IMG/VR virus record: IMGVR_UViG_3300042516_005475
Coordinates: 62,001-126,000 of that record
DNA: 64,000 bases
Direction: 5' to 3' (one strand)
Shown: piece after piece, positions 3,136 through 59,892 of the stretch
Layout of the letters: every line of letters starts with the position of its first letter
Position numbering within the stretch: the stretch's first letter is position 1
Program-made: the position numbers and the translations under genes
The notes under the pieces: model-generated
Databases searched by the model: none
Seen by the model: the letters and a program-made list of their open reading frames with translations, nothing else
What the model was told of the DNA's origin: nothing

Positions 3136-3146
3136 TAAATAATTAT

Positions 3147-4640: not shown

Positions 4641-4641
4641 T

Positions 4642-6602: not shown

Positions 6603-6603
6603 T

Positions 6604-10448: not shown

Positions 10449-10928
10449 ATGGCAACAGTAAACTTAAACAATCTCTTTAAGAAGCCAGTCAATCCTAATA
10501 GTGCTATAAAGTACATTTATCAGGACTTTAATGTCATGTCTATGGAAACACTTTATACCAATAACATTGCTGCTCGTAAAGTAAAGACTGACCTTAATGT
10601 TTCTTACGATGTCGCTGCTGTTAAAAACAGTATTTCTAATCTTTTAACAACAAAGAAGAGTGAAAAGATATTAAGCCCAGAATACGGTTTAAGAATAGAA
10701 GATTTTTTGTTTGAACCAGTTACAAGCACAACAGCTACTGCCATTGCCAACGAGATTGTCAATGCTTTAACAATATTTGAACCAAGAGTTCAAATAGTAG
10801 ATTTGCAAGTGATACCTTATCCAGATCAATACCTTTATGTAATTAATCTGGCATTGAGAATACCAACATTAAAACAATCTTTTTCCTTGCAAGGAACATT
10901 TCAAGGAGACGCAATAACAATTTTATAA
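10449..10928 (+). CDS. Baseplate wedge subunit, T4 gp25-like
   Basis: AVKNSISNLLTTKKSEKILSPEYG...FLFEP...FEPRV matches the gp25/GPW family signature. Confidence 0.9.
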   Translation: MATVNLNNLFKKPVNPNSAIKYIYQDFNVMSMETLYTNNIAARKVKTDLNVSYDVAAVKNSISNLLTTKKSEKILSPEYGLRIEDFLFEPVTSTTATAIANEIVNALTIFEPRVQIVDLQVIPYPDQYLYVINLALRIPTLKQSFSLQGTFQGDAITIL

Positions 10929-10929
10929 T

Positions 10930-12738
10930 ATGGCTACAGGTGTTTTTCCAGAATTCAAATTAGCTCCAAATGCCTATACAGCATTTGACGCCACTAGTCT
11001 TAAGCGCTTAATGATTGAGCGTCTTAACACTCCATCAAATACCGTTTTTACAGATCAGAATTTTGAAGGCAGTAATTTAAATGCGATAATTGATATTGTA
11101 GCATATTCCTACCAGACATTACTCTTTTATCTAAACCAAACATCCAGCGAATCTGTTTTCACAGAGTCTCAATTATATGAGAACATTAACAGAATTGTAA
11201 AGCTTCTAAATTATAACCCAGTTGGACCTCAAACCTGTGCATTACCTTTCGTAGCTAATTCCTCATTACTGAGCGCTGGTGTTTATACAATTCCAAGATA
11301 TTCATACTTAAACGTAAATGGTATTAACTATACTTTTACTAATGATGTTACTTTTGAGAAAACAACTCAAGCAGGAATTAATGAAACCTTAAAACAATTT
11401 AGCTCTACTTATTTGCTCTATCAGGGTAAAATGGTTGAATATCCAACACAGTCCTCTGCTGGAGTAGCATTCGAGACTATTGCTCTATTACCAGGCAATT
11501 CAGTTATTGTTGATAACTTTAATATTTTTGTTTATGTATTTGAAAGACAAACAGGAACATATGTTGAATATAGAAGAGTGGATAGCTTATTCTTATATGG
11601 TCCTCAGGATAGAGTTTGTGAGATTAGATTAAACGAAAATAAGCACTACGAAGTTAAATTCGGAGATAATATTACTGGTCGTCAGTTACAAGGTGGAGAT
11701 TTAATTGCGTTGTATTTCTTACAATCTGATGGAGTAGATGGTCAAGTTAACTCTAACAAGTTAAATGATACCGCAATTTCTCTTTACAACACACCTAGAT
11801 TTAATCAAATTTTCGCTTCTGTAAGAGATGAAAATTTGACATATTTAACTGCTTTACAGGTATTAGGTCTTAATATTAATAACGAGGTAGACTCAACAGC
11901 CTTCTTTGATGCTGAAACAGTAGAATCAATTAGAACAAGAGCACCTCAAACATTTACATCTCAATACAGATTAGTAAATGCTACTGACTATGAAAACTTT
12001 GTTTATACAAACTTTGCTAGCTTTGTATTCTCTACAAAAGTATTAAGCAACTCACAATATTTAAATTCTCATTTAAAGTATTTGACAGACAACTTAAAAC
12101 TAAATGACCCAAATTTAGATACAAATGTATTATCTAATCAAATACTGTTTTCTTCTTCTTGTAATTTTAACAATGTTTATATCTATTGTGTACCAAAAAC
12201 ATCTGCATCTAAAATTACCACGATTACAAAGAATAACTTCGTAACACCAGCTCAAAAGAACTTTGTTATTTCAGCTATTAATTCAGTAAAAACAGTAACC
12301 GCTGAACCAATAATTATGGATCCAGTTTATATGGCATTTCAATTTGGATATGGTTCAAGCGTAGACGACTCTGCAATTCAAGATACTAATTTCGGTGCTA
12401 GGATAATAATAACAACAAACCCTAATATTGTTGTAAATAGAGACAAAATTAAGAGTGTTATTATTAGTACAATTCAGAGTTATTTTGATTTACAATCTCT
12501 AGGTGGTACTGTAAACATAACTGACTTAAATGCTCAAATTCTTGATATTGCTGGGGTACAATCAATTCAAACTGCTAATATAAATGGAGCTAGAAACGGG
12601 CTAAGCTTCGTTTACTATAATTTTCAATACCCAAATATCGATGTAAAATCTTCTGTATCTTCTGTTGTACTTCAAGATTTTATGTTCCCATATTTGCCTG
12701 ACTACTTTACCTTATCTAACTTAATTACTATTCTCTAA
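10930..12738 (+). CDS. Baseplate wedge subunit, T4 gp6-like
   Basis: FTDQNFEGSNL..IIDIVAY, LLNYNP, YEVKFGD, ETVESIRTRAP...SQYRLVNATDYE; follows gp25-like gene. Confidence 0.9.
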   Translation: MATGVFPEFKLAPNAYTAFDATSLKRLMIERLNTPSNTVFTDQNFEGSNLNAIIDIVAYSYQTLLFYLNQTSSESVFTESQLYENINRIVKLLNYNPVGPQTCALPFVANSSLLSAGVYTIPRYSYLNVNGINYTFTNDVTFEKTTQAGINETLKQFSSTYLLYQGKMVEYPTQSSAGVAFETIALLPGNSVIVDNFNIFVYVFERQTGTYVEYRRVDSLFLYGPQDRVCEIRLNENKHYEVKFGDNITGRQLQGGDLIALYFLQSDGVDGQVNSNKLNDTAISLYNTPRFNQIFASVRDENLTYLTALQVLGLNINNEVDSTAFFDAETVESIRTRAPQTFTSQYRLVNATDYENFVYTNFASFVFSTKVLSNSQYLNSHLKYLTDNLKLNDPNLDTNVLSNQILFSSSCNFNNVYIYCVPKTSASKITTITKNNFVTPAQKNFVISAINSVKTVTAEPIIMDPVYMAFQFGYGSSVDDSAIQDTNFGARIIITTNPNIVVNRDKIKSVIISTIQSYFDLQSLGGTVNITDLNAQILDIAGVQSIQTANINGARNGLSFVYYNFQYPNIDVKSSVSSVVLQDFMFPYLPDYFTLSNLITIL

Positions 12739-15071
12739 TGAGTGTACCGTTTTCAATTATAACTGGCAAGGGAAGCACAAGGGAATACGTTGTTAGCAAC
12801 AACAATGTTTTCCCAGTTTCTTCTTACACTGGGATGCCTGTAACTCTAAGTGTTTCTCTATCTAGTTTACCTTTATCTGCCGACAAAGACTTTATTGTAT
12901 TTGCTGTTAATGATAAATTTGTTTTAAAAGAAAACAACTCAGTCTATGATTTTCCATTGCCTGGGGTTTATAAAATTACTTTATTTACTGCTGATTTAAA
13001 TGGTGAACCGATTGAGAGTTATACAACCTATCTTTCAGCTTATAATTACATTACAGATGTAATTAACCCATCCATTGTTCCTGTTAATGATGTTTATTAT
13101 AATTCTTCAACTACAACTTCGGGTATTAATCAAAGCAGAACGTATGTTGATAACATGACAGCTTTTGCTGCTCAATTTACTGACCCTGTTTATGTCTATA
13201 GATATAATACTTGGCAGCTATGTAACAGCTTATCTTCTATAGATTACAAGATTGAATTATATTGTGATGGTAGCTTTTCTAACGACTACGAAAATAGAAC
13301 ATATTACCAAACAAATTGGTACCATTTAGTTCCTTTCTGGCAATTTACAAACGAGAACCAAACAACAATTATTAGGTCTCTAAGTACAGACAGTACAAAT
13401 CTCTACTTAACATATGATGGTTATACTGGTAATGTGAGTACACTAAGCAGTGTAAATAGTATTTTCGTTGGATCTAGCGGTCAAAATGTATTTTATTTTA
13501 AAGACGATTCTCCTTCTAGAGAAACTCTTGAGAGGCTTTATCTAACACAGAATTTAAAAGATGTACCTTTAGCACAACAGATTTTAAATAACAAGTTATT
13601 TTCTATTTTTGAGAAGGGGTTACCATTTATTAACAATTCAAGTACAATTATTGACTTGTATGTTAATTATACAGTCCCAGTTTCCTGGAGCTTCACTAGC
13701 AATGGTTTAACTCAGCCACCGTTACCTAACATTATGTTTAACGGAACATCTTTTCCGTTGTTTATTGCTCCTGCAGATAGTGAAGGTAACATTTTAAAAT
13801 ACTATGGGCAAATGCACTATATTCCTGCTAGTGCAACTATTTCAACAAACTCCTTTAAGTTAGCTTTACTTTCTGCTGATGGAACAAAAGATGCCTTTGG
13901 TAACAATAATTTATTCCCTACAAATTTTCAGTACAATGCTTATGATACAAACAACATATCAACAGAGTTATTAAGCAGTTTTTATGCTGGTGTTTTATCA
14001 GCAAATTATACTAATAGCTTTGCAAGCATAGGAGCTACTACTAACTTTTCTCTAAGTACAGCCTACACAAACATACAGGTTCCTTTTGCAGTAAATCCTG
14101 TTGTATTATCAGCATTCGGTTACGCAATGGATACAGACGGTTTTGGTCAATACATCGAAGGTATATATGTGTTTAATTATTATCCTGAGTATGTAGAGTA
14201 TAACATAATGAAGATTAATGAAAACTTCGATTATGTTGAAACTTTAAAGAGCTATGCGTTAATGCCTAGACTAAAAGATCAAACATCTTTGTTTGATGAT
14301 TTCTTTGCATATGTTGGTGGTACTCAAGAAAGCAGCCCTAATAGCATTGGTAAGAGATATTATGAAAAAATTGCAAATTTCGTTGACAATAACGCTAATG
14401 TTGACGGCGCAAACATTACTCAGCTATATGGTCTCTTTGAAGAAATAAACTACAAAGATAAGAACTACAACATAAAGTTCCCATCTGATGTTCAAAGGGT
14501 AATGGACTTGTTGAGCATTAATTATTCAAGATTACTAGGTTCCGATACAGGCTTTAATAGTAATTACGAAAAGTATGCTAGTGTAGATGCTCAATACTCT
14601 CAAACAAATTTAGGAGCACAGCTTACTAATAGTAGTATCATTTCTGCTGGTTCTAACATTATTTCTTATCAATTTTTTGGAAACGTCTACACAACAATTA
14701 CCCCATCAACAGTTGCATGTAATACCACTGCTTTAGCTACATATTCTGCTGCTAACCCTAGCAGTGTAGATGTTACATTTAATGGTTTATCTTCCTACCC
14801 GTTATCAGCCTATCAGAATAATTGGAATTGGGGATTGCCTACTGATATAAACTGGAACAGTATAACTCAGCAATACAGTTTTTATTTACAGACACCAACT
14901 GTTGTTTCTGACATAAATAAGATTGATGGTTATATTGACTGGAGTAACAATTTGACTACGTTAACTGCTATTCAATTTGATAGTAACTTATCAACATATT
15001 TTACTATGTCTGGTGGGTTAATGGAACAATATCTCGGAAATGCTCTTAGAAGGGGAGTAGGATTAATTTAA
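12738..15071 (+). CDS. Putative baseplate/virion structural protein (gp7-like position)
   Basis: 777 aa, coupled to the gp6-like gene by TAATG overlap; PKD-like YDFPLPGVYKITL; S/T/N/Y-rich. Confidence 0.55.
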   Translation: MSVPFSIITGKGSTREYVVSNNNVFPVSSYTGMPVTLSVSLSSLPLSADKDFIVFAVNDKFVLKENNSVYDFPLPGVYKITLFTADLNGEPIESYTTYLSAYNYITDVINPSIVPVNDVYYNSSTTTSGINQSRTYVDNMTAFAAQFTDPVYVYRYNTWQLCNSLSSIDYKIELYCDGSFSNDYENRTYYQTNWYHLVPFWQFTNENQTTIIRSLSTDSTNLYLTYDGYTGNVSTLSSVNSIFVGSSGQNVFYFKDDSPSRETLERLYLTQNLKDVPLAQQILNNKLFSIFEKGLPFINNSSTIIDLYVNYTVPVSWSFTSNGLTQPPLPNIMFNGTSFPLFIAPADSEGNILKYYGQMHYIPASATISTNSFKLALLSADGTKDAFGNNNLFPTNFQYNAYDTNNISTELLSSFYAGVLSANYTNSFASIGATTNFSLSTAYTNIQVPFAVNPVVLSAFGYAMDTDGFGQYIEGIYVFNYYPEYVEYNIMKINENFDYVETLKSYALMPRLKDQTSLFDDFFAYVGGTQESSPNSIGKRYYEKIANFVDNNANVDGANITQLYGLFEEINYKDKNYNIKFPSDVQRVMDLLSINYSRLLGSDTGFNSNYEKYASVDAQYSQTNLGAQLTNSSIISAGSNIISYQFFGNVYTTITPSTVACNTTALATYSAANPSSVDVTFNGLSSYPLSAYQNNWNWGLPTDINWNSITQQYSFYLQTPTVVSDINKIDGYIDWSNNLTTLTAIQFDSNLSTYFTMSGGLMEQYLGNALRRGVGLI

Positions 15072-17065
15072 TGAACGGAAATATTGCATCATTCATAAAC
15101 TTCTCAAAGACTAAAAAAGGGATCAACCAAAATTCCATATCTACTGAGTTGGAGTATAAGGGGTATATTTCAGAAAAGAGTGTACCTCAAGCAACTCTCA
15201 ATACAGATGAGAAAAATATCATAAGGGATGAGTACATTTCTGCGATACAATATGTATTGCTCAACCTCACAACCCCTCAAGAACGGGTTTTCTTTAAAGA
15301 CTTAGACCTTTCTAATAATAACAACTTAGCTACCGTGATTCCCTTAGTTTCACAGAAGCTAAAAGAGGTAGCAATTTATATTGCCAAGGAAAGAGAAAGA
15401 GCAAAATTCTCAACCATTAAATATAACCTCAAGGGTTCTGATTATGGTACAACAATTTATGTAAAGAACTATGTATACACTCTTTACAATGACCCTGATT
15501 TTACTTCTTTATTTTTAACATTCCCACCACTTTCCTCAATTAACTATCTTGATGCGAGTCTAAACTACTATTATGCTCAAAACGTAGACTTATATGACAA
15601 AGATTACGCAGTAGGTTTACAGGATCCAGGGCTTTATAATGGTGGAGACTATGAAAAGTTAAACCTGTTGTATTTCAACAAGGATTTATATTTTCCTGCC
15701 TTGAGCAGTAATGTAATTAGGCAGTATACTGCCCTCAATTTAAAGTTTTTAAAAACTAGCAACAATAAAACTATTGTTGTTAATAGCAAACAAAAACTTA
15801 AAGTTAAGTATGTTTCTACCAACATTAATGATTTAGAGGCAAAATACTTTTTATACGGTGAGAAAACAGAAGCTAACCTAATTTTTAACATAATTAAAAA
15901 CGGTGTAGCAGGTGCTCAAAGCGCTCTAGGTTCTAACAAGTTCCTTGGTAATAATTTAGTGTATGTAGCTGATGCTAATACATCTAACCCGCTTTCTGGT
16001 GCCTTAGTTGAGGCTGGACAAAGGTATGCTAACATTTTAAACTATCGCAATTACACCTTACAGGCACTTGAATCTAATTTTGCTATTAGAAAGCTCAATC
16101 AAATTGGTGGCTTTTTCTTACCTGAAAAGCAAGGTTTAAGTGTTGCTTTGAGTAAGCAATATAGTTTTTACTACAATACTTCTCTTTCTGGTCTAAATGT
16201 TACAGTTGATCCAGCCTTAGCAATTAACCCTAGAGGTAATTCTAAACTACAATACCCAAATGTGTTCTATTTTACAGAGAACGCTAGTTGGATTATTAAT
16301 GATTTAGCTGGGCAGTATAATTGGGGTAGAATTAAAGACATTAAACCGTATCAAAAGCTTAATGGCTATCAGTCTTATGAAGAAGTTAACTTTGAATACA
16401 AGTCTGGTATCAACAAAGTAACAGATAGCTTTGATTTCTTTACCGGTCCTGAGAGAAATATATGGGCAAATTCAGATGTTTACAGTGTTACGGTTGGTCA
16501 ACCCTTGCCTCTTAATACAAGAGAGGAAAGTTATAACACAGGTGTAGAAGACATCTATAGATGGCAAGGAGATATATACGGCAATAACTATGCTTTGTAT
16601 AAGAGACTCAACAACTATGATGTACCTGAACAATTTAATCAGCAATATAGTAATACAGCTGCATTGAATCTGGAAGACTTTCAAGCAAATGTAGGTTTAA
16701 TTACAGCTTCTGATGAAGTAGCCTTCTTATATAGATTAAGCTCGTTCGATACTGATGTTCAATCTCTTTCTACAACAACAATTTACAATACTATTCATGA
16801 AAAGTATCAAAAGTTTGGAGAGGTTTACGTTAGAACCTTTAATAATACAGCATTGAAAACTTTATCAGATGCATTTAGCGCTGTGTTTTCTAAGTACAGT
16901 ACAGCTATTCAAAATGAAATTAGGAATAGCGTAAAAACATTCAACATAATTAACGATGTTATTATTATTAAGACTGAAAACTATAAGGTGATGGAGAGAT
17001 TTGTGTTTGATATTGATCAAGACACATTTGTTCCATTTTACACATTTAGAACAGAACTTCAGTAG
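15071..17065 (+). CDS. Putative virion structural protein
   Basis: 664 aa, TAATG-coupled within the baseplate operon; no specific motif. Confidence 0.55.
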   Translation: MNGNIASFINFSKTKKGINQNSISTELEYKGYISEKSVPQATLNTDEKNIIRDEYISAIQYVLLNLTTPQERVFFKDLDLSNNNNLATVIPLVSQKLKEVAIYIAKERERAKFSTIKYNLKGSDYGTTIYVKNYVYTLYNDPDFTSLFLTFPPLSSINYLDASLNYYYAQNVDLYDKDYAVGLQDPGLYNGGDYEKLNLLYFNKDLYFPALSSNVIRQYTALNLKFLKTSNNKTIVVNSKQKLKVKYVSTNINDLEAKYFLYGEKTEANLIFNIIKNGVAGAQSALGSNKFLGNNLVYVADANTSNPLSGALVEAGQRYANILNYRNYTLQALESNFAIRKLNQIGGFFLPEKQGLSVALSKQYSFYYNTSLSGLNVTVDPALAINPRGNSKLQYPNVFYFTENASWIINDLAGQYNWGRIKDIKPYQKLNGYQSYEEVNFEYKSGINKVTDSFDFFTGPERNIWANSDVYSVTVGQPLPLNTREESYNTGVEDIYRWQGDIYGNNYALYKRLNNYDVPEQFNQQYSNTAALNLEDFQANVGLITASDEVAFLYRLSSFDTDVQSLSTTTIYNTIHEKYQKFGEVYVRTFNNTALKTLSDAFSAVFSKYSTAIQNEIRNSVKTFNIINDVIIIKTENYKVMERFVFDIDQDTFVPFYTFRTELQ

Positions 17066-17096
17066 TAGAAATAACAAAAATAGATAAATAATTTCG

Positions 17097-19409
17097 ATGG
17101 TTTGCTCTGTACCTAACTTAACTGGATCTTTTGGAAGCTGCGCGCAAGACATTGTTGCAAGCGATTTTAACAAAGATTCTGTGTTTTGGTATATAGAAAA
17201 TGAAGATTCTGTATACAATTTTAAGCTAACTCTCTGCCCTTTCCTATCAGCTACACCATTAAAAATTGTTTATCCAGAAATTGAAATTTTTAATTTAAAG
17301 ACGTTTAATAAAACATACGCTTTCCCTTCATTTAACACAGTTGACGAGCAATCTTTTCCAAGTTTACTACCATTCTCTGTTAATAGCTTACCAAGCGGAG
17401 CAGAGTATAATATAAAAAGTATAGACCAACCAGTATTAAGTTACAACTCAATTAATAACATTTTTGATTTATCTTTTATTGGTAGATTTCCTGCTGGAGT
17501 AGAGGGTTTATCAATTTTTAATTACCGTTTCTTAAAGAATAATCAGACAGTTAATCCTTACGCAATAAACATTTATACTCCAAGTCAGTTTATTTTCTCT
17601 TCTAACTTTGCTGATGGTTATTTCTCTAAGTTCTTAGATTTACAAACATATCCTAAGAGTGTTGGTTTTTATGTGTTGCCCCTTTCAGTTAATACAATAG
17701 AATATCCTTGTAATTATGAACCCCCCTGCCAAAGTATTACAGCTGTTCACAATTTAGCTAATGACAGCTTAAAGTTTAACTCTGCTAGTGTTGATACTTT
17801 AAGCACATTTGGTAACAATGTTACTTTTTTAAACTATGTTTGCGGTTTTAACCCTGATAAAGACATACAGATAGTATTTGATGCTGCAGCTTATATTTTT
17901 AATAATGAGCAGGTTTTAGGTACAGTTAATAGTACAGAAATTTGTTCTGCTAGAACAGTTACTAATTTTACTAGAGGGGGAGCAGGAGAAGGTTTTTGTG
18001 TTTATTTTTACCAATTAACAAGCTTTGCTGATTTTATTGGTTCAGGACCAGCTTCTTGTTTTGGCTATGCTCCTGGCTCAGCTGTTGATGTAGACTACTT
18101 AAACGGAACACCTATGATGTTTCCGTTTGGTATGTATGGTGGTTATTTGGGGTTAGGTTTTGATATTGGTGGAGATTTCGGTACTCGTTTACATGGAAAA
18201 AGTGCTGTTGGGTCTGCTTCTCCTAATGCAAAACGTCCAAACACTATTACATTAAGAAGCAGTCAATTAGATAATTTTAATGTTTTAACAACAACAAATA
18301 ATTTAACAGCATACAATTTATATCTTGCACAACAAGTCACTTCTGTAGATGAAGTTAAGTTTAACACCTACAAAGTTGTATTAGATAATCACGGCAAAAG
18401 AATTAGAGCAAGTGTATTAGATTGTCTTTCAAACGAGTTTATAGATATTTTTTGCTATGAGGTTGACTTTGCAGATGGCTGTGATGCTTCTCCTTCAATT
18501 TTATTTCCTGGAATAAGCTTTTCTACAAGTGAATATACATGTAATTTTGAAATTAAAAATGTTTCATTTATAGGAGCCTTAGCTGACACTGAAGCAGATG
18601 CTTGTGGTAGAGTGCGTATACCAACACCAACTCCAACCTGCCCAATCTTCCTGCTATCTCCTACACCTACACCAACAAGTTCTGTTACACCAACACCAAC
18701 ACCTTCAATATCAGTATCTTCTACAGTTACACCAACTGTCACACCTACAAATACAGTAACCCCAACTTTAACACCTACAAAAACAGTTACACCTACAAAT
18801 ACTGTTACACCTACTCCTACTTTAACTCCTTTATACTCCCCAACCCCAACAAGTACTGCAACTCAAACAGTTACACCTACACCTACCATTACCCCAACTT
18901 TAACAGTTACACCTACAAAAACAGTTACACCTACACCTACCATTACCCCATCAGTAACAGTTACTCCAACACCATCCCCTGCTGCAACAAATGTGTATTG
19001 TTGGTTTACTCCTTCAATTTACATTTATCTTTCTAGCTTTGCCTCTTGTAGAGCTTATTTTACTGCTAATGGTATTTCTGAGCAATCAGGTGGAGTTATT
19101 ATTAGGAGTAATATTGCGGCGCTGGGTGGTATTGATTTAACCAAGATATTAAGATTTATTTTCAATAGACTGCCAACTGTTTCAAATATTTCTAGTACTA
19201 ATAATTGGGGTATATATGGATCAACTACACCAAACTATTATGTAAACTACACATACGATTCTGGTAATAATGATTATACTGTTGACATTTATAGAACAAG
19301 CGATAATGCTAATATTGCCAGTATTTCAAGCTTATCGTTCGTAAATAATGATGCAGCTCAGGAATCGTTTATAGCCTGCCAGTGTTTGTATGTAGCCTTA
19401 TACGTATAA
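17097..19409 (+). CDS. Putative virion adhesin: L-type lectin-like domain + Thr/Pro linker + Cys-containing C-terminal domain
   Basis: [11 protein letters not shown]...GPASCFGY...[14 protein letters not shown]...PNTITLR resembles bacterial L-type lectin domains. TPT repeats at about 18621-18980. C-terminal domain is shared with the 3533-aa protein. Confidence 0.65.
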
Positions 19410-19410
19410 T

Positions 19411-21150: not shown

Positions 21151-21183
21151 TTGAAAAATAATTAAGGTGGTATAAATCCTCGT

Positions 21184-24146: not shown

Positions 24147-24158
24147 ATAAATATTAAT

Positions 24159-25061
24159 ATGGCTGATGATACAGAATATATTTCAGATCTAGAACCGATA
24201 CTAGAACTAGCCCCAACTGATAGTTTTCCAGTAGAAACTCTAGAGGGTACTAAGAGAATAGAGTTTAAAGATGTTATTCTCGGTCCAGACAACATTAGCT
24301 TTTACGAAGAGGTAGCAACAAATACACTGGCAATTGTTGTACTATCGTCTGAAGTTTTAGATCTTGATGCGAGTGTCACCAACATTAACTCCGGTTTAAC
24401 TGGCTTATCTGCAGCATATGATGAAGCAATTAAGAGCGGTTTTTGCTATGTTAGCTTCAATGATGCAGGTACTTTATCAGTATTAGCTAGCTCTTCTAAC
24501 GTAGCGGGTATTATATCAACTGATGGTGGTTCTAGAATTCAAATTACAGGTAATAATGTTTCTAATTTAATTTTTGCTTCAATAAATGTTACATTAAACA
24601 ACAATATTTCAGCCTCTACTTCTACAGATGACTTCTTAACATATACACCAGTAATTGACAGTAGAACTTCTAATACATTTAAAGTTGGTATAAATTCAGT
24701 ATTGAATCATTTTACAACAGTTTCTTTACCAACAGCTATTAACGTTACCTCTGAAGCCTTTAGTCCAATTACAAGCTTAAATGTTACCCCAGCTTCTATT
24801 ACACCTGTAACACAGGTTGTACCTACATCTGTCTCAGTATTATTAAACCCTACTGGTAACGGTAACGTAGTTGAATCTATTGCAGTAACTAACTTACCTT
24901 CCGCAATAGTTGAAACAGTTACTGGTAATACAACAACTAAAAACATTGTAAGTAATGTAGCTGTAACTGATACCTCGTTTAATTTATCTTTAATTACAGA
25001 TCAAGGCAGTGGTTTACCTTTAAGAAATACAGAAATTAATATCTCTTTTAGATACAGATAA
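24159..25061 (+). CDS. Putative fibre/virion structural protein
   Basis: N-terminal ISDLEP.....TDSFPVET..GTKRI resembles common phage fibre N-termini; T/S/V-rich; TAAATA-N5-ATG upstream. Confidence 0.55.
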   Translation: MADDTEYISDLEPILELAPTDSFPVETLEGTKRIEFKDVILGPDNISFYEEVATNTLAIVVLSSEVLDLDASVTNINSGLTGLSAAYDEAIKSGFCYVSFNDAGTLSVLASSSNVAGIISTDGGSRIQITGNNVSNLIFASINVTLNNNISASTSTDDFLTYTPVIDSRTSNTFKVGINSVLNHFTTVSLPTAINVTSEAFSPITSLNVTPASITPVTQVVPTSVSVLLNPTGNGNVVESIAVTNLPSAIVETVTGNTTTKNIVSNVAVTDTSFNLSLITDQGSGLPLRNTEINISFRYR

Positions 25062-28000
25062 TGAATGTTCTAAATTTATCAGCTCTAATACCAATGGAGG
25101 TAGAATACTCCTTGGATGGTAATGTTAATTTAACAAATAACATTACAAACTATTTCTATGGTTTAAATCTTTACAGTACAGAGCTGTTTAATTTTGCTAG
25201 AGATCTTTCAATCAACTACTATAACACCTTTATCTTAACAGATAAACTGGATAAACCCGACTTTCTCACCTTAAGCGAACCAATTACAGCTTCTTATCCT
25301 AAGACAATTAGTACAACTGTTCAATGTGTTGGTCTTTCTTCTACTGGTCTAGGTTTTTGGGAAGATTATGCTGCTAATTACTCTTCTACAAGCCCGTACT
25401 TATCTTGCGGAGAGGGAATATTTTCAACAGGTAGCATTTGGAATTTAGGTTCTTGGAATATGTATGATATTGAGTTTTTGAATGCAAATCAATGTTACAT
25501 TTCCAAGCTAAGAAACAATAATTCAGTATTAACTCAGCTACAAACAAAAGAATATCTTGGACCTGCATTTACAGAGGATGTAAACTACCTTACATTTTCA
25601 TCAACTCCTTACACTTTTAACTACATCTATAATGAGCAAAACAATACTATTGTATTTTATTTTAATTATGCTCCTAATGGTAGTAGCTCTAACAGCTTAT
25701 TTTTAATTACACAAGAAGAAAATAGAGTAGTTTTAAAGTCTGTAGATGAATATGTGATTTCTGATCTTGGTCTTTATAATTTAAGCGCAGTTTTCTGTTT
25801 ATCTTACAGAGATGCTAATACAAGATTGGCAGAATTTACTACTAACTATAATGCATATAAAAGAACATATTTTCCAACAGCTGAAACTTCTTTATGTGAT
25901 AGCTATGATGGGTTGAAGAACAACTATTTAGTATCAAGCAACGTTGTATTTACGGATAATAAGTTCCTTGTTAACTTTCAACCACTTAAAAATCAGCTAG
26001 ATTTAAATTATAACTTTACTGCAACCAATAGCTTCATTGGCCAACCGTTTGATAATAGAGATTATCAATCTATTGTATCTGGAACTGACCAAGAATTAGG
26101 CTTTCCAAACCTAACATTAACATTTTATACATATAACGCTCCTATTACGTTCAAGAAAGGAGCCTTAACCTATTTTCACTTCCCAGTTAGTGCTACTCCG
26201 TTTGATAAACTCAATGTAAACGATTCAACTTTGGTTGATTGTGGCTCTTTTGCAGGGCAAAACCCATTAGATGCTGATAAGGTCTTTAAAAAGCTATTAC
26301 CAACTGTAGCTGGCAACAATATAGATAAGAATCAAACAGGTACTTACTTGTGTACTTGGTTGTATATATCAGCTTTTGACAGTAGACCTATTTGGATGGA
26401 TCGTTATTACAATCCAAACTTTACTTCTCTACAAACAGCCTATACCCAAAACTTTAATTCAGACTTTGTAAACACTGTTACTACTCTTAGTGCCAAGAAT
26501 TTTACATATTTTGATAAAGTTAGTGATTTAACCTTTGAGCCTAATAGTACATATAGCTATTATAGACTATCTGAGGCAGATATTGCTCGTATTAATAACA
26601 ATCTTTATGAGAATCAGATTAATTCTGATGTTATTAATGTTTATGATGCTAATTTAAACCTCCAACAGGCTGGAGCCGCTTCTTTTGAATATGGTTTCAA
26701 TACTGGTTCACTTGTTCAAAAGACTTCTGCCTCAGGAGATTATAGTATTTGCTTCAATATAAAGAGCAAAGACTTTAAAAAGAAGTTTGGTAATACCTTA
26801 TTAAACAATTTTTATAATTTAAACGGGTTGAATATTACAAATTATGACAATTTAAACAACTTAATACTGTTTACCTCTGGTTCAGAGATTGTTGTAAGTA
26901 ATACTAATTTTGATTCATTAAGAAATGTAAAGGTGCTTTTAGAGAAATCTATTTTTAAGACACCAGATGCCTTATTAAGCATTGATTTTAACAATAACGT
27001 TGAGGGGTTTTATGTTACCAGTATTAGTACCCTTTCAAGCAACGTCGGTATTAATTTAAATGTAGGTCCAAACACTTCAGACTTCTATCTTTCTAAGTTA
27101 GATAAGAACTTCACTACATTAAATACAATACTTTTAACTTCCTTCTCTGGTGGAACCTATAATTTTGTTAGTTCTAACATAGATGATACTTACTACTACG
27201 CGCTTTTCAATACATTTAATACTCAAGTAGCTGCAACTAATCAAAATTACTTTTTAATTAAGTATCCTTTGTCTGGAATGTTATTAAGTCAGCCTATTAA
27301 TACTCCAGTTAACTTGCAGCTCCCTAGATATGGTTCAGTTAATGGTAATAGCATTACAATTTCTGACTTTACTTTGTGTAGAAGTACCTATAACTTTATT
27401 CTTTCTGCTGGTTTACCTGTTTATTATTTGACTGATTATGCAAATAACAGCATTTGTTCTGATGTAAACAACAGAGCCTGGTATATTTATAATAATATTT
27501 TATATCATTCTGTTACTGATTTAGGTAATTTAGATGGTTTTAATCTATCATATCTTAAAGATTCAAATAACAATCAAACTATTACTAATGTAACAACTGA
27601 TAACAGTGGTAACATTTACTTAATTTCTGATAACGGTACAGATAGTTACTTGTATAAGCTTGATAATAATAGAAAACCTATTTACTTTCAGTCTCTTTCT
27701 TCAAGCTTTGGTGCACCTACAACGAAATATTTGGATATTTTGTATGTAAACAACAATGGAGTTATAGAACCAAGACCTTATGTTATATATGACCCGTACC
27801 AACCAAGTAGTTTATCAGCCAGAAGCTTTAAAGAGGTTAATGTTTTTGATGCTAGTGGCAATTTAATTTATATTAAGCCACTAGAATATGAAACTGATAC
27901 GTTTAACATAAGCAATCAGAACAGAAAAGGGTTTAGAAGAACGCTTTCTAATGTTGAGCAGGTTAATAATCTGTTTGAAGTAGATGGTAACCCAATTAAA

Positions 28001-28597
28001 TTTAACTATTATGTGTCAGATGTAGCAGGGGATGTAGAAAAGATTACTTTACAGGCTAATTTAGAAACATTAGCTAACCAAGATTTATTCTTTACATTTA
28101 CTTTTAATTCTCTTACTGGTGGTTCTAAGCTCTATATTAATAGTATCTTGGTTGAAGAATCTGATACTACTAATATTAAGTATTCCAAGACCCCTATCTC
28201 TGGTTCTATAGCCTTAAATTCTATTTCATTGACTGACCCAGCCTTTGAGTCTACTCAATTCAAGTGTCAAAACCTTGAGATGTACGGTATAAAGGCCTTC
28301 AACACAGTGTTATCAAAATATGATATTAGAAATCTGTTTATTAGATCAGCTAGAATTACAGATATAAACTGGAACGTTCCAGCAGGCAAGAGAAACATAA
28401 CTGAAACCATTCAGCAGAACTTTAAGTTTAGTTTACCAGGTTATAAGACCAACTTGTTTGATATTATTGTTTCAGGAGCTCAAGGATTAAACGATGTACA
28501 AAGAGAAGCAATTGCTGAAAAAATAAGAGAGTACATAAAGGGTAACATTCCGATAAATACTATTATTAACGAGGTTAACATCAGAAGTAATGAATAA
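25061..28597 (+). CDS. Large virion structural protein (beta-rich; LamG-like segment near C-terminus)
   Basis: 1178 aa, TAATG-coupled; FFTFTFNSLTGGSKLYINSILV resembles LamG/ConA strands. Confidence 0.55.
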   Translation: MNVLNLSALIPMEVEYSLDGNVNLTNNITNYFYGLNLYSTELFNFARDLSINYYNTFILTDKLDKPDFLTLSEPITASYPKTISTTVQCVGLSSTGLGFWEDYAANYSSTSPYLSCGEGIFSTGSIWNLGSWNMYDIEFLNANQCYISKLRNNNSVLTQLQTKEYLGPAFTEDVNYLTFSSTPYTFNYIYNEQNNTIVFYFNYAPNGSSSNSLFLITQEENRVVLKSVDEYVISDLGLYNLSAVFCLSYRDANTRLAEFTTNYNAYKRTYFPTAETSLCDSYDGLKNNYLVSSNVVFTDNKFLVNFQPLKNQLDLNYNFTATNSFIGQPFDNRDYQSIVSGTDQELGFPNLTLTFYTYNAPITFKKGALTYFHFPVSATPFDKLNVNDSTLVDCGSFAGQNPLDADKVFKKLLPTVAGNNIDKNQTGTYLCTWLYISAFDSRPIWMDRYYNPNFTSLQTAYTQNFNSDFVNTVTTLSAKNFTYFDKVSDLTFEPNSTYSYYRLSEADIARINNNLYENQINSDVINVYDANLNLQQAGAASFEYGFNTGSLVQKTSASGDYSICFNIKSKDFKKKFGNTLLNNFYNLNGLNITNYDNLNNLILFTSGSEIVVSNTNFDSLRNVKVLLEKSIFKTPDALLSIDFNNNVEGFYVTSISTLSSNVGINLNVGPNTSDFYLSKLDKNFTTLNTILLTSFSGGTYNFVSSNIDDTYYYALFNTFNTQVAATNQNYFLIKYPLSGMLLSQPINTPVNLQLPRYGSVNGNSITISDFTLCRSTYNFILSAGLPVYYLTDYANNSICSDVNNRAWYIYNNILYHSVTDLGNLDGFNLSYLKDSNNNQTITNVTTDNSGNIYLISDNGTDSYLYKLDNNRKPIYFQSLSSSFGAPTTKYLDILYVNNNGVIEPRPYVIYDPYQPSSLSARSFKEVNVFDASGNLIYIKPLEYETDTFNISNQNRKGFRRTLSNVEQVNNLFEVDGNPIKFNYYVSDVAGDVEKITLQANLETLANQDLFFTFTFNSLTGGSKLYINSILVEESDTTNIKYSKTPISGSIALNSISLTDPAFESTQFKCQNLEMYGIKAFNTVLSKYDIRNLFIRSARITDINWNVPAGKRNITETIQQNFKFSLPGYKTNLFDIIVSGAQGLNDVQREAIAEKIREYIKGNIPINTIINEVNIRSNE

Positions 28598-31500
28598 TCT
28601 ATATTCAGTTGTATCAAATTCATTAGGGTTCAACAGAGCAATTTCTATTGAACCAGAAAAATTCCCTGTATTGCTAGAGGATATTTTAATCAAACCTAAT
28701 GATTTTCTAACAGAGAATAATTTTAACTTTTCTCTATCCTGCTTATATCAAGACTTTTTGTCTATTGTAAGTGATAGCTATGTTTATAGTCCCAATTTTC
28801 CAGTAACAAACCCGTTTTTTGATAATATTAATAACATTGTAGGTACTCTTTGTGGTACATTAGTTCCTTCTAACTATTCAACTGAAGGAACAGCTTCTAT
28901 TAGATATTTTGTAAATGGTATTCCGCACAGTAATGCAGCTTTTAACATAATTTACAACACTCATGATTTCGTTATCAGTGGTAATTATTTGACTTTAGCA
29001 GTAGGTATTTTAAGCACTACAACTTTATCTCCTATTCTTTCTTCTAATGTTTATTATCCTGCTTTAGGAGTTTATAACTACCCTCTTTCAGCTATTTTTA
29101 ATAATGGAGAGGTAACAAATAGTAGTGAATTTCCTAATCAAGGTTTCCAAGAAAGCGCTGTTGTACCTAATTTTGGTGTTGTAACAAAGTTCTTAAATAA
29201 GAACTTGAATTTAAAGTATAACTCAATTTCAAAACTTAAGATAGCCAATGAAAGGTTGTATGTTTTAGATAATATTAGTAACAAGTTTTTAATTTACGAC
29301 ATTAGTGATGTTATAGTTAATAGAACAAATAAAACAACTTTTGAGGTACCGCTTGAAACATTAGGTTTCGCAACATCTTCAAGAACAAATATAAGAAAGA
29401 TTAGCTCTTTTTGTGTTAATGAGAACTATGTTGTATTCTTTAACTATGTTAACAACGCTCTTTCTATTTTCTCAACTAATTTAAACCAGTTATATGATTA
29501 TTCTCAAGACAAAGTATCTGTTTCTGGGTTTAGAAATACAGAAGTATTTGCAGATATAGAGTTTGATCCGTTCGGTAATTTGTATTTGTTAACGCAAAGT
29601 GGCACTGTTTATGTTTATACAGTTTCAAATACCGCTTTAACAAGAGTAAAAACATATAATATCCAACCACAAAACACAAACGTATTTTCTTCTTTATCTG
29701 CAATTCAAGTTACCTATCAGAAAGAGATATTTAAAAAGATATCATTCTCAAAATCTGATACAAATGTATTTTATGTATCTACAGATACTAACATCTACAA
29801 GAGATTTGTAGATAGAAATGTAAACATTGGTCAGTTTAATAACTTTGTTAATAACACAACATATTATTCTACTCTAAGTAATATTGCTGACCCATTTAAT
29901 ACGTTAATGGGTTGCTGTTTTGCTGAATATCCTGCTGAAAAGACCTCTCTAGACTTTTTAAAGTATCAAATTAATAGCACTAACAGTATTAGTTATAACG
30001 GTTATGAGATTTTTTCTGTATGCTTTACAGATAACTGTACGTACGCCTCTCAAAACGCTGGCCCTGGCTTTGTTTTAAATGTTGGTTCATATGGTTCAAT
30101 TGATTTTTTAACAGCTAATCTAACATATGGATTAAACCCGGTTTCTGCCTCTGGTATTACATTTGTTGTAGATAGGCCTAACTATATAAATTTAAATAAT
30201 GACGATTTATCAGCTGTTCTGGTTTATTCCTTTGATGACATCAAGGTAAAGGCAGATGAATTCATTACAGACTTTACAATAAACAAGTCTTTGCGCAAGC
30301 TGTTATATAATATTTTTAATTATCAGACTTATCAAGCCTTTAAACCTGTTGTAGATATTGATATTAACAATAATGCAATTTATAAAAAGCTTGATTACAT
30401 TGTTTCTTACAATAAAAATCAAAATATTACTAATTTTGATAATTTTATAGGTATAAATGAAATTACAAGCACAGTATTTTTAAATAGATGTTTTACTAAA
30501 GTTTACGAATTGCTTGCAACAATGCAAGCCAATTTTAACTCTAGAGTAATTAATATCTACCCTAGATATGCAGATTCAGTTTTGTTAAACCAAACAACAC
30601 AAAAATATGCATCGTTTTATAATGATAGTGAGACGTTTATTACTGGTGAGTTTGACACTGAAATTGAACCTTTAAATCCTAATCTCTGTGTTGTTGAGAA
30701 TGCTAGTACAATTGTAGTGTCTCCAACACCATCCCAGACCCCTTTAGTTTCTCCAATAGTCTTTGTTACACCTACACCTACACCAGCCCCTTCTCCTACA
30801 ATGCCGCCAACACCTACATCTTCCGGGTATGTGTTGGTGAATAAATCTATTCAACATGTCGCTACAGTTTATCTAAACAACGAGTACGAAATTCCAGTAC
30901 CAATAGCACCTTTCCCAAACTACGACATTAAGCCTCTTTCAGCTATTTATGATGGGACAGGAATTGATACTATTGTTTCAGAGTTTAGTGCATATTTTGA
31001 CCAGGGAGAGTTTTATATTGAGCTAGCTAAAGTTAACGGTGATTATGAAAAATTAGTAGGTAAGCAATTTGGTGATTACATACTTCAGAGTTATACACCA
31101 TCGAATAATAGTGAGTTTATTTTAGGGGCAAGAACGTGTTTACAAGAAACACACACCATAGAAAGTTTATCTCCTACACCAACACCATCTATAACCCCAA
31201 CCAATACAGTTACACCTACAGTAACACCGACTATTACCCCAACTAGTACAGTTACCCCTACAGTAACACCGACTATAACTACAACACCCGCTAATACAGT
31301 TACTCCAACCAACACTGTTACCCCTACAGTAACACCAACTAACACTGTTACTCCAACCAATACGGTTACACCTACAGTAACTCCTTCTGTAACCCCAACA
31401 ACAGGTCTTTCTCCAACACCAACTCAAACAATAACCCCTACAAATACAGTTACTCCTACAGTAACACCAACTAACTCTGTAACCCCTACAGTAACACCAA

Positions 31501-32318
31501 CCAATACAGTTACACCAACCAATACAGTTACACCAACAAACACAGTAACCCCAACAGTAACACCACCAGTTACAGTAACACCAACTAACTCTGTAACCCC
31601 TACAGTAACACCAACCAATACAGTTACACCAACCAATACAGTTACACCAACAAACACAGTAACCCCAACAGTAACCCCAACAGTTACAGTAACACCAACT
31701 AACTCTGTTACTCCAACAGTTACAGTAACACCAACAGTAACACCACCAGTTACAGTAACACCAACTAACTCTGTTACTCCAACAGTTACAGTAACCCCAA
31801 CAGTAACACCACCAGTTACAGTAACACCTACAGTTACAGTAACACCACCAGCTACAGTAACACCTACAGTTACAGTAACCCCAGCAGCTACAGTTACTCC
31901 AACACCAACCCCCTCATCCCCACAATCTTGCCTTGAGCCCCTAACAACAGTTAGATGGGTATTGTGGAACCCTTACAATGATACAGACCCTTCGACTTTA
32001 GTTAATGCTGTAGTTAATTATACTCTCTCTAATAATTCAGGTAGCTCAACTTTCGGTTCCGGTACTCAATCCGTTCCAGTTGGAGCTTTTGGACAATCAC
32101 CAGCTGGTACATATTATACTTTAGGTACAACAAGTGATTGTTGTTCAGCGCCTTATACAGGTACTTTATTTTACACCTTATCTTGGGTAAATAGTTATGG
32201 GGTTTCTCGAGCAAATCGAGATATACCAGATTATTCAAACTCAGAAAACTACTGTAGTTGGGCAGCATCGTTACCTGTAGAGAGTGGTTTACCGACGTTT
32301 ACTTTAACTCTTAGTTAA
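28590..32318 (+). CDS. Large virion protein with propeller-like region, long Thr/Pro linker and Cys-containing C-terminal domain
   Basis: 1242 aa. NHL-like DIEFDPFGNLYLL and [15 protein letters not shown] repeats at about 31170-31920. Confidence 0.65.
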   Translation: MNNLYSVVSNSLGFNRAISIEPEKFPVLLEDILIKPNDFLTENNFNFSLSCLYQDFLSIVSDSYVYSPNFPVTNPFFDNINNIVGTLCGTLVPSNYSTEGTASIRYFVNGIPHSNAAFNIIYNTHDFVISGNYLTLAVGILSTTTLSPILSSNVYYPALGVYNYPLSAIFNNGEVTNSSEFPNQGFQESAVVPNFGVVTKFLNKNLNLKYNSISKLKIANERLYVLDNISNKFLIYDISDVIVNRTNKTTFEVPLETLGFATSSRTNIRKISSFCVNENYVVFFNYVNNALSIFSTNLNQLYDYSQDKVSVSGFRNTEVFADIEFDPFGNLYLLTQSGTVYVYTVSNTALTRVKTYNIQPQNTNVFSSLSAIQVTYQKEIFKKISFSKSDTNVFYVSTDTNIYKRFVDRNVNIGQFNNFVNNTTYYSTLSNIADPFNTLMGCCFAEYPAEKTSLDFLKYQINSTNSISYNGYEIFSVCFTDNCTYASQNAGPGFVLNVGSYGSIDFLTANLTYGLNPVSASGITFVVDRPNYINLNNDDLSAVLVYSFDDIKVKADEFITDFTINKSLRKLLYNIFNYQTYQAFKPVVDIDINNNAIYKKLDYIVSYNKNQNITNFDNFIGINEITSTVFLNRCFTKVYELLATMQANFNSRVINIYPRYADSVLLNQTTQKYASFYNDSETFITGEFDTEIEPLNPNLCVVENASTIVVSPTPSQTPLVSPIVFVTPTPTPAPSPTMPPTPTSSGYVLVNKSIQHVATVYLNNEYEIPVPIAPFPNYDIKPLSAIYDGTGIDTIVSEFSAYFDQGEFYIELAKVNGDYEKLVGKQFGDYILQSYTPSNNSEFILGARTCLQETHTIESLSPTPTPSITPTNTVTPTVTPTITPTSTVTPTVTPTITTTPANTVTPTNTVTPTVTPTNTVTPTNTVTPTVTPSVTPTTGLSPTPTQTITPTNTVTPTVTPTNSVTPTVTPTNTVTPTNTVTPTNTVTPTVTPPVTVTPTNSVTPTVTPTNTVTPTNTVTPTNTVTPTVTPTVTVTPTNSVTPTVTVTPTVTPPVTVTPTNSVTPTVTVTPTVTPPVTVTPTVTVTPPATVTPTVTVTPAATVTPTPTPSSPQSCLEPLTTVRWVLWNPYNDTDPSTLVNAVVNYTLSNNSGSSTFGSGTQSVPVGAFGQSPAGTYYTLGTTSDCCSAPYTGTLFYTLSWVNSYGVSRANRDIPDYSNSENYCSWAASLPVESGLPTFTLTLS

Positions 32319-42982: not shown

Positions 42983-43022
42983 TGCATCTTGTTTTTTGTG
43001 AAGTTTCTTGTTAATAACATTG

Positions 43023-58564: not shown

Positions 58565-58569
58565 TTTTT

Positions 58570-59385: not shown

Positions 59386-59389
59386 AATT

Positions 59390-59851: not shown

Positions 59852-59892
59852 ATGTTAATTGATTTCAATCGAAAATAATATACATATTTTGT

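What the first reader, a model, noticed from the sequence alone, without database searches (positions are those of the whole stretch)
12738..32318. Strong over-representation of Leu-Ser-(Ala/Ser) in virion proteins: a possible modification sequon
Seen: by manual count the 777-aa protein at 12738-15071 has 11 LS[AS] tripeptides plus 3 LST, in non-repetitive sequence; a rough composition estimate predicts only one or two. The motif recurs in 15071, 17097, 19411, 24159, 25061, 28590 and the collagen head (YLSSS, TLSAS, ALSAG). I found none in the 809-aa ClpC. The collagen units ISG/VSG/LSG fit a broader hydrophobic-Ser-small pattern. Inference: a lineage-specific acceptor sequon for one of the phage glycosyltransferases, selected on exposed virion surfaces.
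Basis: partly seen in the sequence, partly recalled or inferred. Interest (0 to 1): 0.62.

Follow-up and report, generated by a model that had tools for sequence, protein, structure and literature searches.

The report
Leu-Ser-small motif in phage tail proteins
The outer baseplate and tail-fibre proteins of an uncultured T4-like phage group carry five to eight times more Leu-Ser-(Ala/Gly/Ser) tripeptides than chance allows; the excess is real and is kept by selection, but I could not show that it is a sugar-attachment site.

Summary
ORF 12738-15071 (777 aa) has 11 LS[AS] against 1.16 expected, and 0 of 2000 shuffles reach that. Across the seven ORFs 12738-32318, L-S-A is the most over-represented non-repeat tripeptide of all 8000 (19 vs 2.1, P about 1e-12). 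The rest of the 230-kb phage genome sits near expectation (61 vs 50).

The signal is in the protein, not the DNA, and it depends on residue order: the permutations L-A-S and S-L-A are depleted. The excess is confined to the genes after baseplate gene gp6. It recurs in about 70 related uncultured T4-like loci, but not in T4 or in cyanophage Syn19.

The refined motif is [P/A]-L-S-[A>G>S]-aromatic. Motif residues are more conserved than the same residues elsewhere. Distant homologues keep the motif count (5-16 vs about 1.5) at mostly different positions. In the structure model the sites fall in strands, loops and helical turns alike.

Three complete relatives lack both neighbouring glycosyltransferase families, GT60 and HtrL, yet keep the excess. 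The proposed link to those enzymes is therefore not supported.

I favour a motif read by a trans-acting factor such as a modifying enzyme or a chaperone (about 0.4). A clade-specific structural idiom is close behind (about 0.35). Serine exposure and modification remain untested.

The parts
12738..15071 (+). The 777-aa protein in the gp7 position. It has an N-terminal PKD domain, four more Ig-like beta-sandwich domains, and a conserved C-terminal domain. It carries 11 LS[AS] and 3 LST.
   Evidence: AF2 with a 58-sequence alignment gave pLDDT 80.3.
14802..14810 (+). L689-S690-A691, within the family signature Y-P-L-S-x-Y-x-x-x-W-G-W-G-L. This is the only motif copy whose L and S are at least 90% invariant across the whole family. 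The model places it in a one-turn helix.
13230..13238 (+). L165-S166-S167, the second positionally conserved copy (19 strict matches in 42 distant homologues). It lies in a low-confidence loop.
12858..12881 (+). The doublet L-S-S-x-x-L-S-A (residues 41-48). The same doublet recurs at residues 684-691 and at residues 20-27 of ORF 19411.
   Evidence: A spacing of 5 is the most frequent gap between sites in the family (36 cases).
15071..17065 (+). A 664-aa tail-module protein with 3 LS[AS] vs 0.62 expected and L-S 10 vs 4.6. It has homologues in most related loci.
17097..19409 (+). A 770-aa tail protein with a phrog_15511 domain. It has 2 LS[AS] vs 0.85 and L-S 10 vs 5.3.
19411..21150 (+). A 579-aa tail protein with a phrog_15511 domain. 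It has 3 LS[AS] vs 0.40.
21184..22473 (+). A GT60-type glycosyltransferase (PF11397, E 8e-73) with no LS[AS]. It is not required for the motif excess in relatives.
22470..24146 (+). A two-domain glycosyltransferase-like protein. The N-terminal half matches HtrL_YibB (E 8e-16) and the C-terminal half matches phrog_842. It has no LS[AS].
24159..25061 (+). A 300-aa protein with 2 LS[AS] vs 0.62.
25061..28597 (+). A 1178-aa tail protein (a weak lead suggests a LamG-like fold). It has 8 LS[AS] and 1 LSG against 1.55 and 2.08 expected (for LS[AS] and LS[AGS] respectively). Its homologue family shows the same pattern: conservation among close relatives and positional turnover among distant ones.
28590..32318 (+). 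A 1242-aa tail protein with a phrog_15511 domain and 5 LS[AS] vs 0.93. The TPT/VTP repeat words counted fall within the seven region ORFs and probably in this one (GC skew of window 30001-32000 matches the repeat-bearing 32381 ORF), but the strict repeat search listed no Pro/Thr run in it.

Best explanation
L-S-[A/G/S] is a genuine short motif kept by selection. It is usually preceded by Pro or Ala and followed by an aromatic or aliphatic residue. It marks the peripheral baseplate and fibre proteins, that is the genes after gp6, of a large uncultured clade of T4-like phages.

Shown: the excess is 5-8 fold and depends on residue order. It is confined to this gene module. The motif residues are more conserved than their surroundings. 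Distant homologues keep the number of copies (about one per 100 residues) while most positions change.

Inferred: selection acting on motif density rather than on fixed positions, together with mixed secondary-structure contexts and almost no information in the flanks, is how a short linear motif read by a trans-acting factor behaves. The leading candidate for that factor is an enzyme that modifies the serine, with O-glycosylation first among the possibilities. A fibre-assembly chaperone is the second candidate. The reading factor is not necessarily the adjacent GT60 or HtrL-like transferases, and probably is not.
For: - Statistics.
- Protein-level signal: diverse codons and no DNA word.
- Order and residue specificity in the 777-aa family: third position A 8.5x > G 5.2x > S 4.7x > T 2.3x; first position L 8.5x >> V 2.6x > I 1.8x; centre S 8.5x > T 3.8x; the permutations L-A-S 0.39x and S-L-A 0.51x.
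- Flanks carry at most 0.3 bit per position.
- Clade-wide and module-specific: in distant loci the downstream ORFs have 690 vs 157.5 and the upstream ORFs 33 vs 60.
- Absent from T4 gp7-gp12 plus wac (2 vs 3.9) and from the Syn19 giant structural protein (6 vs 5.3).
- Turnover with the count maintained, seen in two unrelated families.
- The motif L and S form islands of conservation: 0.88 and 0.91 against a mean of 0.75, and 0.87 and 0.82 with flanks at 0.67 against 0.73.
- Mixed structural contexts in a pLDDT-80 model: of 15 central Ser/Thr, 6 are in strands, 3 in helices and 6 in coil.
- Glycosyltransferase cassettes sit inside the tail module here and in relatives, for example GT60 plus a GT1-like and a GT10-like gene in L026. 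All complete relatives that were checked carry some glycosyltransferase.
Against: - No modification was observed, and none could be observed with these tools.
- No known sequon has this form.
- The excess does not depend on GT60 or HtrL.
- At the two copies that are invariant among close homologues (378-380 and 457-459), the serine sits mid-strand. Bulky hydrophobic residues lie at i-2 and/or i+2 (L377; V456 and F460), which suggests partial burial and a structural role.
- In relatives, a tail protein with leucine-rich repeats has 27-30 copies for a purely structural reason. This proves that structure alone can generate the motif.
- The homologue sequences are related to one another, so the pooled counts overstate the independent evidence.
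- The alignment of the variable N-terminal parts is poor, which inflates the apparent turnover.
- The giant 3533-aa protein and the collagen-like fibre are not enriched.
Confidence: 0.4

Rival explanations
1. A cis-acting structural idiom. Leu anchors into a hydrophobic pocket, the Ser hydroxyl caps a backbone NH (an ST-turn or N-cap type contact), and a small residue allows a tight turn or close packing. The beta-rich modules of this clade's tail proteins (PKD/Ig-like, LamG-like, LRR) would reuse this element, and it would spread by domain shuffling. No modification is involved.
For: - L689-S690 are among about 25 nearly invariant residues of the family.
- L-S-A at 378 and 457 is invariant among 34 homologues and lies inside strands with hydrophobic neighbours.
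- Substitutions are conservative, as packing would demand: L to I/V, and A to S/G/C/T.
- Several sites lie at strand ends or helix starts (420, 439, 742, 751).
- Hydrophobic enrichment at +5 fits a hydrophobic-staple geometry.
- LRR-bearing relatives show the motif as part of a fold consensus.
- The excess does not depend on the neighbouring transferases.
Against: - There is no common secondary-structure context, no extended flanking signature and no domain periodicity.
- Most positions are not conserved between distant homologues although the count is.
- There is no detectable paralogy among most of the seven window proteins.
- Comparable beta-rich tail proteins of T4 and Syn19 lack the excess.
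- Strong discrimination for Leu over Ile and Val is unusual for strand positions.
Confidence: 0.35
2. One reading: L-S-[A/S] is the acceptor sequon of the adjacent GT60-type (21184-22473) or HtrL-like (22470-24146) glycosyltransferase.
For: - Both genes are embedded in the tail-gene run.
- The same arrangement occurs in close relatives (L002, L007) and, for GT60, in six distant loci.
- PF11397 relatives are polypeptide GlcNAc-transferases. This last point is established knowledge of CAZy family GT60, recalled from memory and not tested here.
Against: - Three complete or near-complete genomes lack both families but keep the excess.
- Fold enrichment is the same with GT60 (85 vs 20.5) and without it (375 vs 94.1).
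- Characterised GT60 enzymes act on Thr or hydroxyproline in Pro/Thr-rich segments (recalled). The window offers long TPTNTVTP repeats and a GLP-rich collagen-like fibre next to a P4H-type 2OG-Fe(II) oxygenase.
Confidence: 0.1
3. The excess is an artefact of amino-acid composition, low-complexity sequence, recent internal duplication, or a DNA word such as a methylation or promoter site that happens to be translated.
For: - The proteins are rich in Ser.
- Part of the excess is already visible at the dipeptide level (L-S 2x, S-A 1.7x).
- TCA is used for 10 of the 19 serines in L-S-A, against about 20% overall.
Against: - The excess survives shuffles and per-protein expectations and a Markov expectation.
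- Permutations of the same residues are depleted.
- 26 different nine-base spellings occur.
- The pentamer shows no strand or frame excess.
- There are no internal repeats or paralogy.
- The classical N-x-S/T sequon, used as a control, is not enriched.
Confidence: 0.03

Closest known systems
Three-residue O-glycosylation motif of Bacteroidota, D-(S/T)-(A/I/L/V/M/T) (recalled from the literature, not tested here)
   Same: It is a tripeptide with the acceptor Ser/Thr in the centre and a small or aliphatic residue after it. It is scattered over many unrelated proteins of one functional class, with little flanking information.
   Different: Here Leu replaces Asp at the first position. The third position is restricted to A/G/S. 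The proteins are made in the cytoplasm rather than exported. No modification has been demonstrated.
Leucine-rich-repeat consensus, for example the plant-type ...N-x-L-S/T-G-x-I-P... (recalled)
   Same: L-[S/T]-[G/A/S] followed by a hydrophobic residue is part of a fold-defining repeat. A tail protein of related phages (L068:16612-20718) has Pfam LRR hits and 27 copies.
   Different: No window protein has an LRR hit. The modelled 777-aa protein is built of Ig-like sandwiches. There is no 20-30-residue periodicity.
GT60 polypeptide alpha-GlcNAc-transferases (Dictyostelium Skp1 Gnt1, Trypanosoma cruzi mucin transferase; Pfam PF11397)
   Same: ORF 21184-22473 matches PF11397 at E 8e-73, so a protein-directed transferase is plausibly present in the tail module.
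   Different: The known acceptors are hydroxyproline or Thr in Pro/Thr-rich segments, not L-S-A. The motif excess occurs without this gene. The nearest cultured homologues, at 45-51% identity, are uncharacterised genes of Xanthomonas and Stenotrophomonas jumbo phages.
T4 baseplate wedge protein gp7 and the peripheral baseplate proteins gp8-gp12
   Same: The genomic position matches: directly after gp25 and gp6. The gene order is conserved in about 70 related loci.
   Different: There is no detectable sequence or fold match to T4 gp7 or to any solved structure. T4's proteins show no motif excess.

Membership tests
Protein O-glycosylation sequon (any enzyme) | The motif is over-represented in the target protein class beyond what composition predicts | tested here: met
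Protein O-glycosylation sequon (any enzyme) | The acceptor Ser/Thr is solvent-exposed in the folded protein | tested here: inconclusive
   Only secondary structure was returned, without coordinates. Contexts are mixed. Sites 378 and 457 have hydrophobic neighbours at i-2 and/or i+2 (L377; V456 and F460). Site 99 is flanked by Tyr.
Protein O-glycosylation sequon (any enzyme) | A covalent glycan is detected on the motif serine | not testable with these tools
   This needs glycopeptide mass spectrometry on virions or co-expressed protein.
Acceptor sequon of the neighbouring GT60 or HtrL transferases | The motif excess co-occurs with the enzyme across genomes | tested here: not met
   G001-G003 lack PF11397 and PF09612 yet keep 6-7 sites vs about 1.1. 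Fold enrichment is the same with and without GT60 nearby.
Leucine-rich repeat proteins | A Pfam LRR match or a 20-30-residue periodic L-x-x-L-x-L-x-x-N pattern | tested here: not met
   The window proteins have no LRR hit. The model shows Ig-like domains. There is no periodicity. The feature is met only in a relative's tail protein.
Fold-determined structural signature | The same alignment column and the same secondary-structure element across the family | tested here: not met
   Only sites 165 and 689 are positionally conserved in distant homologues of the 777-aa protein, and none in the 1178-aa family. Caveat: the alignment of the variable regions is poor.
T4-like myovirus baseplate module | gp25 and gp6 homologues immediately upstream, with other T4-type virion and packaging proteins (sheath, portal, terminase) in the genome | tested here: met
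   PF04965 E 8e-15 and phrog_219 E 7e-35. Sheath, portal and terminase were found.

The most novel reading that the evidence does not exclude
L-S-(A/G/S) is a previously unknown serine-modification sequon, with O-glycosylation the most likely chemistry. An uncultured, environmentally widespread clade of T4-like phages would use it to decorate its outer baseplate and fibre proteins in the host cytoplasm. Site density would be held at about one per 100 residues while positions turn over, much like the glycan shields of enveloped viruses.
Probability: 0.25. Interest if true: 0.8.

Novelty: new variant of a known kind. Interest (0 to 1): 0.5.

Why it matters
Short motifs that are enriched in one class of proteins, conserved as residues but mobile in position, usually mean that something reads them.

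It would matter for host range, for evasion of receptor-blocking defences and for the stability of environmental phages. It would also give a simple sequence rule for predicting modified sites in metagenomic phages.

If the motif is instead a structural idiom, it becomes a cheap sequence marker for the peripheral tail proteins of a large phage clade that is otherwise hard to annotate. None of the seven window proteins reaches a Pfam gathering threshold, and the only PHROG matches are to an unannotated family.

In either case the analysis separates the motif from the glycosyltransferases that sit beside it. It also points to more likely acceptors for those enzymes: the Pro/Thr repeats and the collagen-like fibre.

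Tried and rejected
- **Composition or low-complexity artefact:** rejected by shuffles, per-protein and Markov expectations, and depleted permutations.
- **DNA-level word:** rejected. 26 codon spellings occur, and there is no strand or frame excess of the commonest pentamer.
- **Recent duplication or paralogy:** an all-against-all BLASTP of the region's proteins found only one unrelated C-terminal match.
- **One site per Ig-like domain:** no clear periodicity in pair distances.
- **General property of phage tail proteins:** rejected. T4 gp7-gp12 plus wac have 2 vs 3.9, and the Syn19 giant protein 6 vs 5.3.
- **General property of virion proteins:** rejected. The portal, the capsid-like protein, the 3533-aa protein and the collagen-like fibre are not enriched.
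- **Classical N-x-S/T sequon as a parallel signal:** not enriched.
- **Avoidance of the motif in non-tail proteins:** L-S-A is 0.43x in upstream ORFs of related loci. Those ORFs are a few orthologous families counted many times, and the window's own genome shows no avoidance (28 vs 20.6), so I do not claim it.
- **Known relatives:** no Pfam or PHROG match and no tblastn match in the phage-genome collection for the 777-aa protein. No solved structure matches. The fold searches returned only generic Ig-like matches and one uncharacterised family member.
- **Literature:** no paper on such a motif or on GT60 in phages.
- **Not run:** Complex prediction of a transferase with a substrate fragment, because I do not claim that they bind. 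No read mapping and no large representative search, because neither was needed for the claim.
Full report
**Setting.** The window is bases 62001-126000 of a 230,047-bp IMG/VR virus record rated complete. It is a T4-like myovirus. A gp25 homologue lies at 10449-10928 (PF04965, E 8e-15) and a gp6-like wedge protein at 10930-12738 (phrog_219, E 7e-35). The genome also has a sheath, a portal, a terminase and a DNA polymerase. The nearest cultured relatives of gp6 are cyanophages, at only about 28% identity. The flagged region, 12738-32318, is the run of large genes directly after gp6. In T4 that position holds the peripheral baseplate and fibre genes.

The motif was chosen after looking at the data, so I scored all 8000 tripeptides in the seven ORFs. 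After the words of a Pro/Thr repeat, L-S-A is the top tripeptide (19 vs 2.08, P 1.3e-12) and L-S-S follows (15 vs 4.05). The dipeptide L-S is itself doubled (86 vs 41.8). Over the whole genome, the region has 34 vs 6.5 and all other ORFs 61 vs 49.9.

The sites use TCN and AGY serine codons and five leucine codons, in 26 different spellings. The commonest DNA pentamer shows no strand or frame excess. The signal therefore lies in the protein. Permutations of the same three residues are depleted in relatives, L-A-S to 0.39x and S-L-A to 0.51x, so local composition does not explain it.

**How far does it extend?** The 777-aa protein has 33 homologues at 46-92% identity. A pattern scan of IMG/VR then gave 80 loci down to about 24% identity. 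In these the order gp6, 777-like, 664-like is conserved.

In the distant loci the ORFs after gp6 hold 690 LS[AS] vs 157.5 expected. The ORFs before gp6 hold 33 vs 60.

T4's gp7-gp12 plus wac have 2 LS[AGS] vs 3.9. The 6325-aa structural protein that follows gp6 in cyanophage Syn19 has 6 vs 5.3. Within the window's own genome the portal, the capsid-like protein, the terminase, the giant 3533-aa protein and the collagen-like fibre are not enriched. The excess is thus specific both to a clade and to a gene module. It is not a property of virion proteins in general.

**What is the motif?** In the 777-aa family:
- The third position prefers A (8.5x) > G (5.2x) > S (4.7x) > T (2.3x).
- The first position prefers L (8.5x) far above V (2.6x) and I (1.8x).
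- The centre prefers S (8.5x) over T (3.8x).
- The residue before is often P (4.8x) or A (3.3x).

Across 1020 distinct sites, the residue after the motif is enriched in Tyr and Phe and almost never Pro. No flanking position carries more than 0.3 bit. The doublet L-S-S-x-x-L-S-A occurs three times in the window.

**Conservation.** Among close homologues the motif S and A are conserved at 0.85 and 0.88, against 0.65 and 0.59 for other S and A. Substitutions are conservative: L to I/V, A to S/G/C/T, and S to T at one site. The 1178-aa family behaves in the same way.

In conservation profiles, L and S stand out as islands. In the 777-aa family they score 0.88 and 0.91 in average surroundings. In the 1178-aa family they score 0.87 and 0.82 in surroundings that are less conserved than the protein mean (0.67 vs 0.73).

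In a 58-sequence alignment reaching 22-28% identity, only two window sites keep their column: 165, and 689 inside the family signature Y-P-L-S-x-Y-x-x-x-W-G-W-G-L. Yet each distant homologue still has 5-16 LS[AGS] vs about 1.5 expected, mostly at other columns. In the 1178-aa family essentially no site is shared with distant members (at most one column in two of seventeen), and most of those members still have 4-13 vs 1-2.3.

Two caveats apply. The variable parts align poorly. In close homologues, many 'new' sites come from near-motif states such as V-S-S, L-N-G or L-T-A.

**Structure.** With the deep alignment, AlphaFold2 gives a usable model (pLDDT 80.3). It shows five beta-sandwich domains, the first a PKD domain, followed by a mixed alpha/beta C-terminal domain. 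Fold searches find only generic Ig-like proteins and one uncharacterised family member. No solved structure is related.

The fifteen central Ser/Thr of the strict and near-strict sites fall in strands (six, two of them at strand ends), in short helices or helix starts (three) and in coil (six). There is no common context and no domain periodicity. At the two copies invariant among close homologues (378-380 and 457-459), the serine has bulky hydrophobic residues at i-2 and/or i+2 (L377; V456 and F460), which hints at partial burial.

**The glycosyltransferase link.** ORF 21184-22473 is a GT60-type enzyme (PF11397, E 8e-73). ORF 22470-24146 combines an HtrL_YibB domain with a second transferase-like domain. 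Some relatives carry a larger cassette at the same place, with GT60, a GT1-like gene and a GT10-like gene in L026.

Three complete or near-complete relatives (96%, 100% and 100% complete) have no match to either family. Their homologues still carry 6-7 sites vs about 1.1. Fold enrichment is the same in loci with and without GT60 nearby. These genomes do hold GT2- or GT4-type genes, so 'some transferase' cannot be excluded.

From recalled knowledge, GT60 enzymes act on Thr or hydroxyproline in Pro/Thr-rich segments. The window offers exactly such substrates. There are long TPTNTVTP repeats in the 3533-aa protein. There is also an 813-residue collagen-like region, rich in GLP and GIS triplets, in 54443-58564. 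That fibre gene is followed by a tail-fibre assembly chaperone and a P4H-type 2OG-Fe(II) oxygenase. These are better candidate acceptors for the neighbouring enzymes than L-S-A.

**Interpretation.** The selection on this motif is real, but the mechanism is not shown.

I give the edge, at 0.4, to a motif read by a trans-acting factor, either a serine-modifying enzyme or an assembly chaperone. My reasons are these:
- Density is maintained while positions move.
- The contexts are mixed and the flanks carry little information.
- Leu is sharply preferred over Ile and Val.
- The excess is limited to one protein class of one clade.

A structural idiom is nearly as likely, at 0.35:
- Two copies are deeply conserved.
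- Some serines look partly buried.
- Substitutions are of the kind packing would allow.
- A leucine-rich-repeat tail protein in relatives shows that a fold alone can produce 27-30 copies.

Artefact gets about 0.03.

**Limits.** Homologous sequences are not independent, so the pooled counts overstate the evidence. The strongest independent evidence is the seven mutually unrelated window proteins, together with the differing site positions in distant homologues. I found no literature on such a motif.

Noticed in passing
window 32381-42982: The 3533-aa ORF is not collagen-like. It carries several long runs of TPTNTVTP-type Pro/Thr repeats (for example from about residue 195 to beyond 400, where the printed stretch ends, and about 1230-1290) separated by globular repeats. 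These mucin-like runs are plausible acceptors for a GT60-type transferase. N-x-S/T is strongly under-represented in this ORF (42 vs 94.5).
   Followed up: partly
window 54443-60675: A collagen-like tail fibre (813 residues of G-X-Y, mostly GLP, GIS and GAS) is followed by a Ser/Ala-rich 271-aa ORF with no family match, then a Phage_tail_APC assembly chaperone (59390-59851) and a P4H-type 2OG-Fe(II) oxygenase (59893-60675). Together with the GT60 gene, this resembles a pathway of prolyl hydroxylation followed by GlcNAc addition.
   Followed up: partly
window 43008-45437: A full-length ClpC/ClpB-type double-AAA+ unfoldase with a Clp_N domain is encoded directly after the giant repeat protein, inside the structural gene run. 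It may be a fibre-assembly or disaggregation helper.
   Followed up: no
L068:16612-20718 and L061:14038-18180: Related phages carry a tail-module protein of about 1370 aa with leucine-rich repeats and an MBG domain. It has 27-30 L-S-[AGS] copies as part of the repeat consensus.
   Followed up: partly
L026:18350-23279: In some distant relatives, GT60 is followed by a GT1-like gene, a GT10 (fucosyltransferase-like) gene and two unknown ORFs. This forms a multi-enzyme glycan cassette at the same place in the tail module.
   Followed up: no
window 12738-32318, L-S-A sites: The serine in L-S-A uses TCA in 10 of 19 cases. TCA accounts for about 20% of all serine codons in these genes and for 25% of x-S-A cases. 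I have no explanation.
   Followed up: partly
window 21184-22473: The nearest cultured homologues of the GT60 gene (45-51% identity) are in jumbo phages of Xanthomonas (XacN1, Xoo-sp13) and Stenotrophomonas. In XacN1 the gene sits beside a carbamoyltransferase, with a GT9 gene about 7 kb further on and a giant ORF just beyond it.
   Followed up: partly
G000 12846-15347 (outside the window): A further two-domain glycosyltransferase (phrog_8858 and phrog_22332) lies next to a second 2OG-Fe(II) oxygenase hit. This is a second pairing of a transferase with an oxygenase in the same genome.
   Followed up: no
window 775-7749: Five ORFs (786, 497, 130, 522 and 381 aa) have no hit above the reporting cut-offs (E 0.01 in Pfam; E 1e-5 in PHROGs, where the 130-aa ORF was not scanned). 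Genes of matching size and order stand before gp25 in close relatives (L002-L004), and ORFs of similar size occur there in distant ones. They contain no LS[AS] at all, against about 2.5 expected.
   Followed up: no
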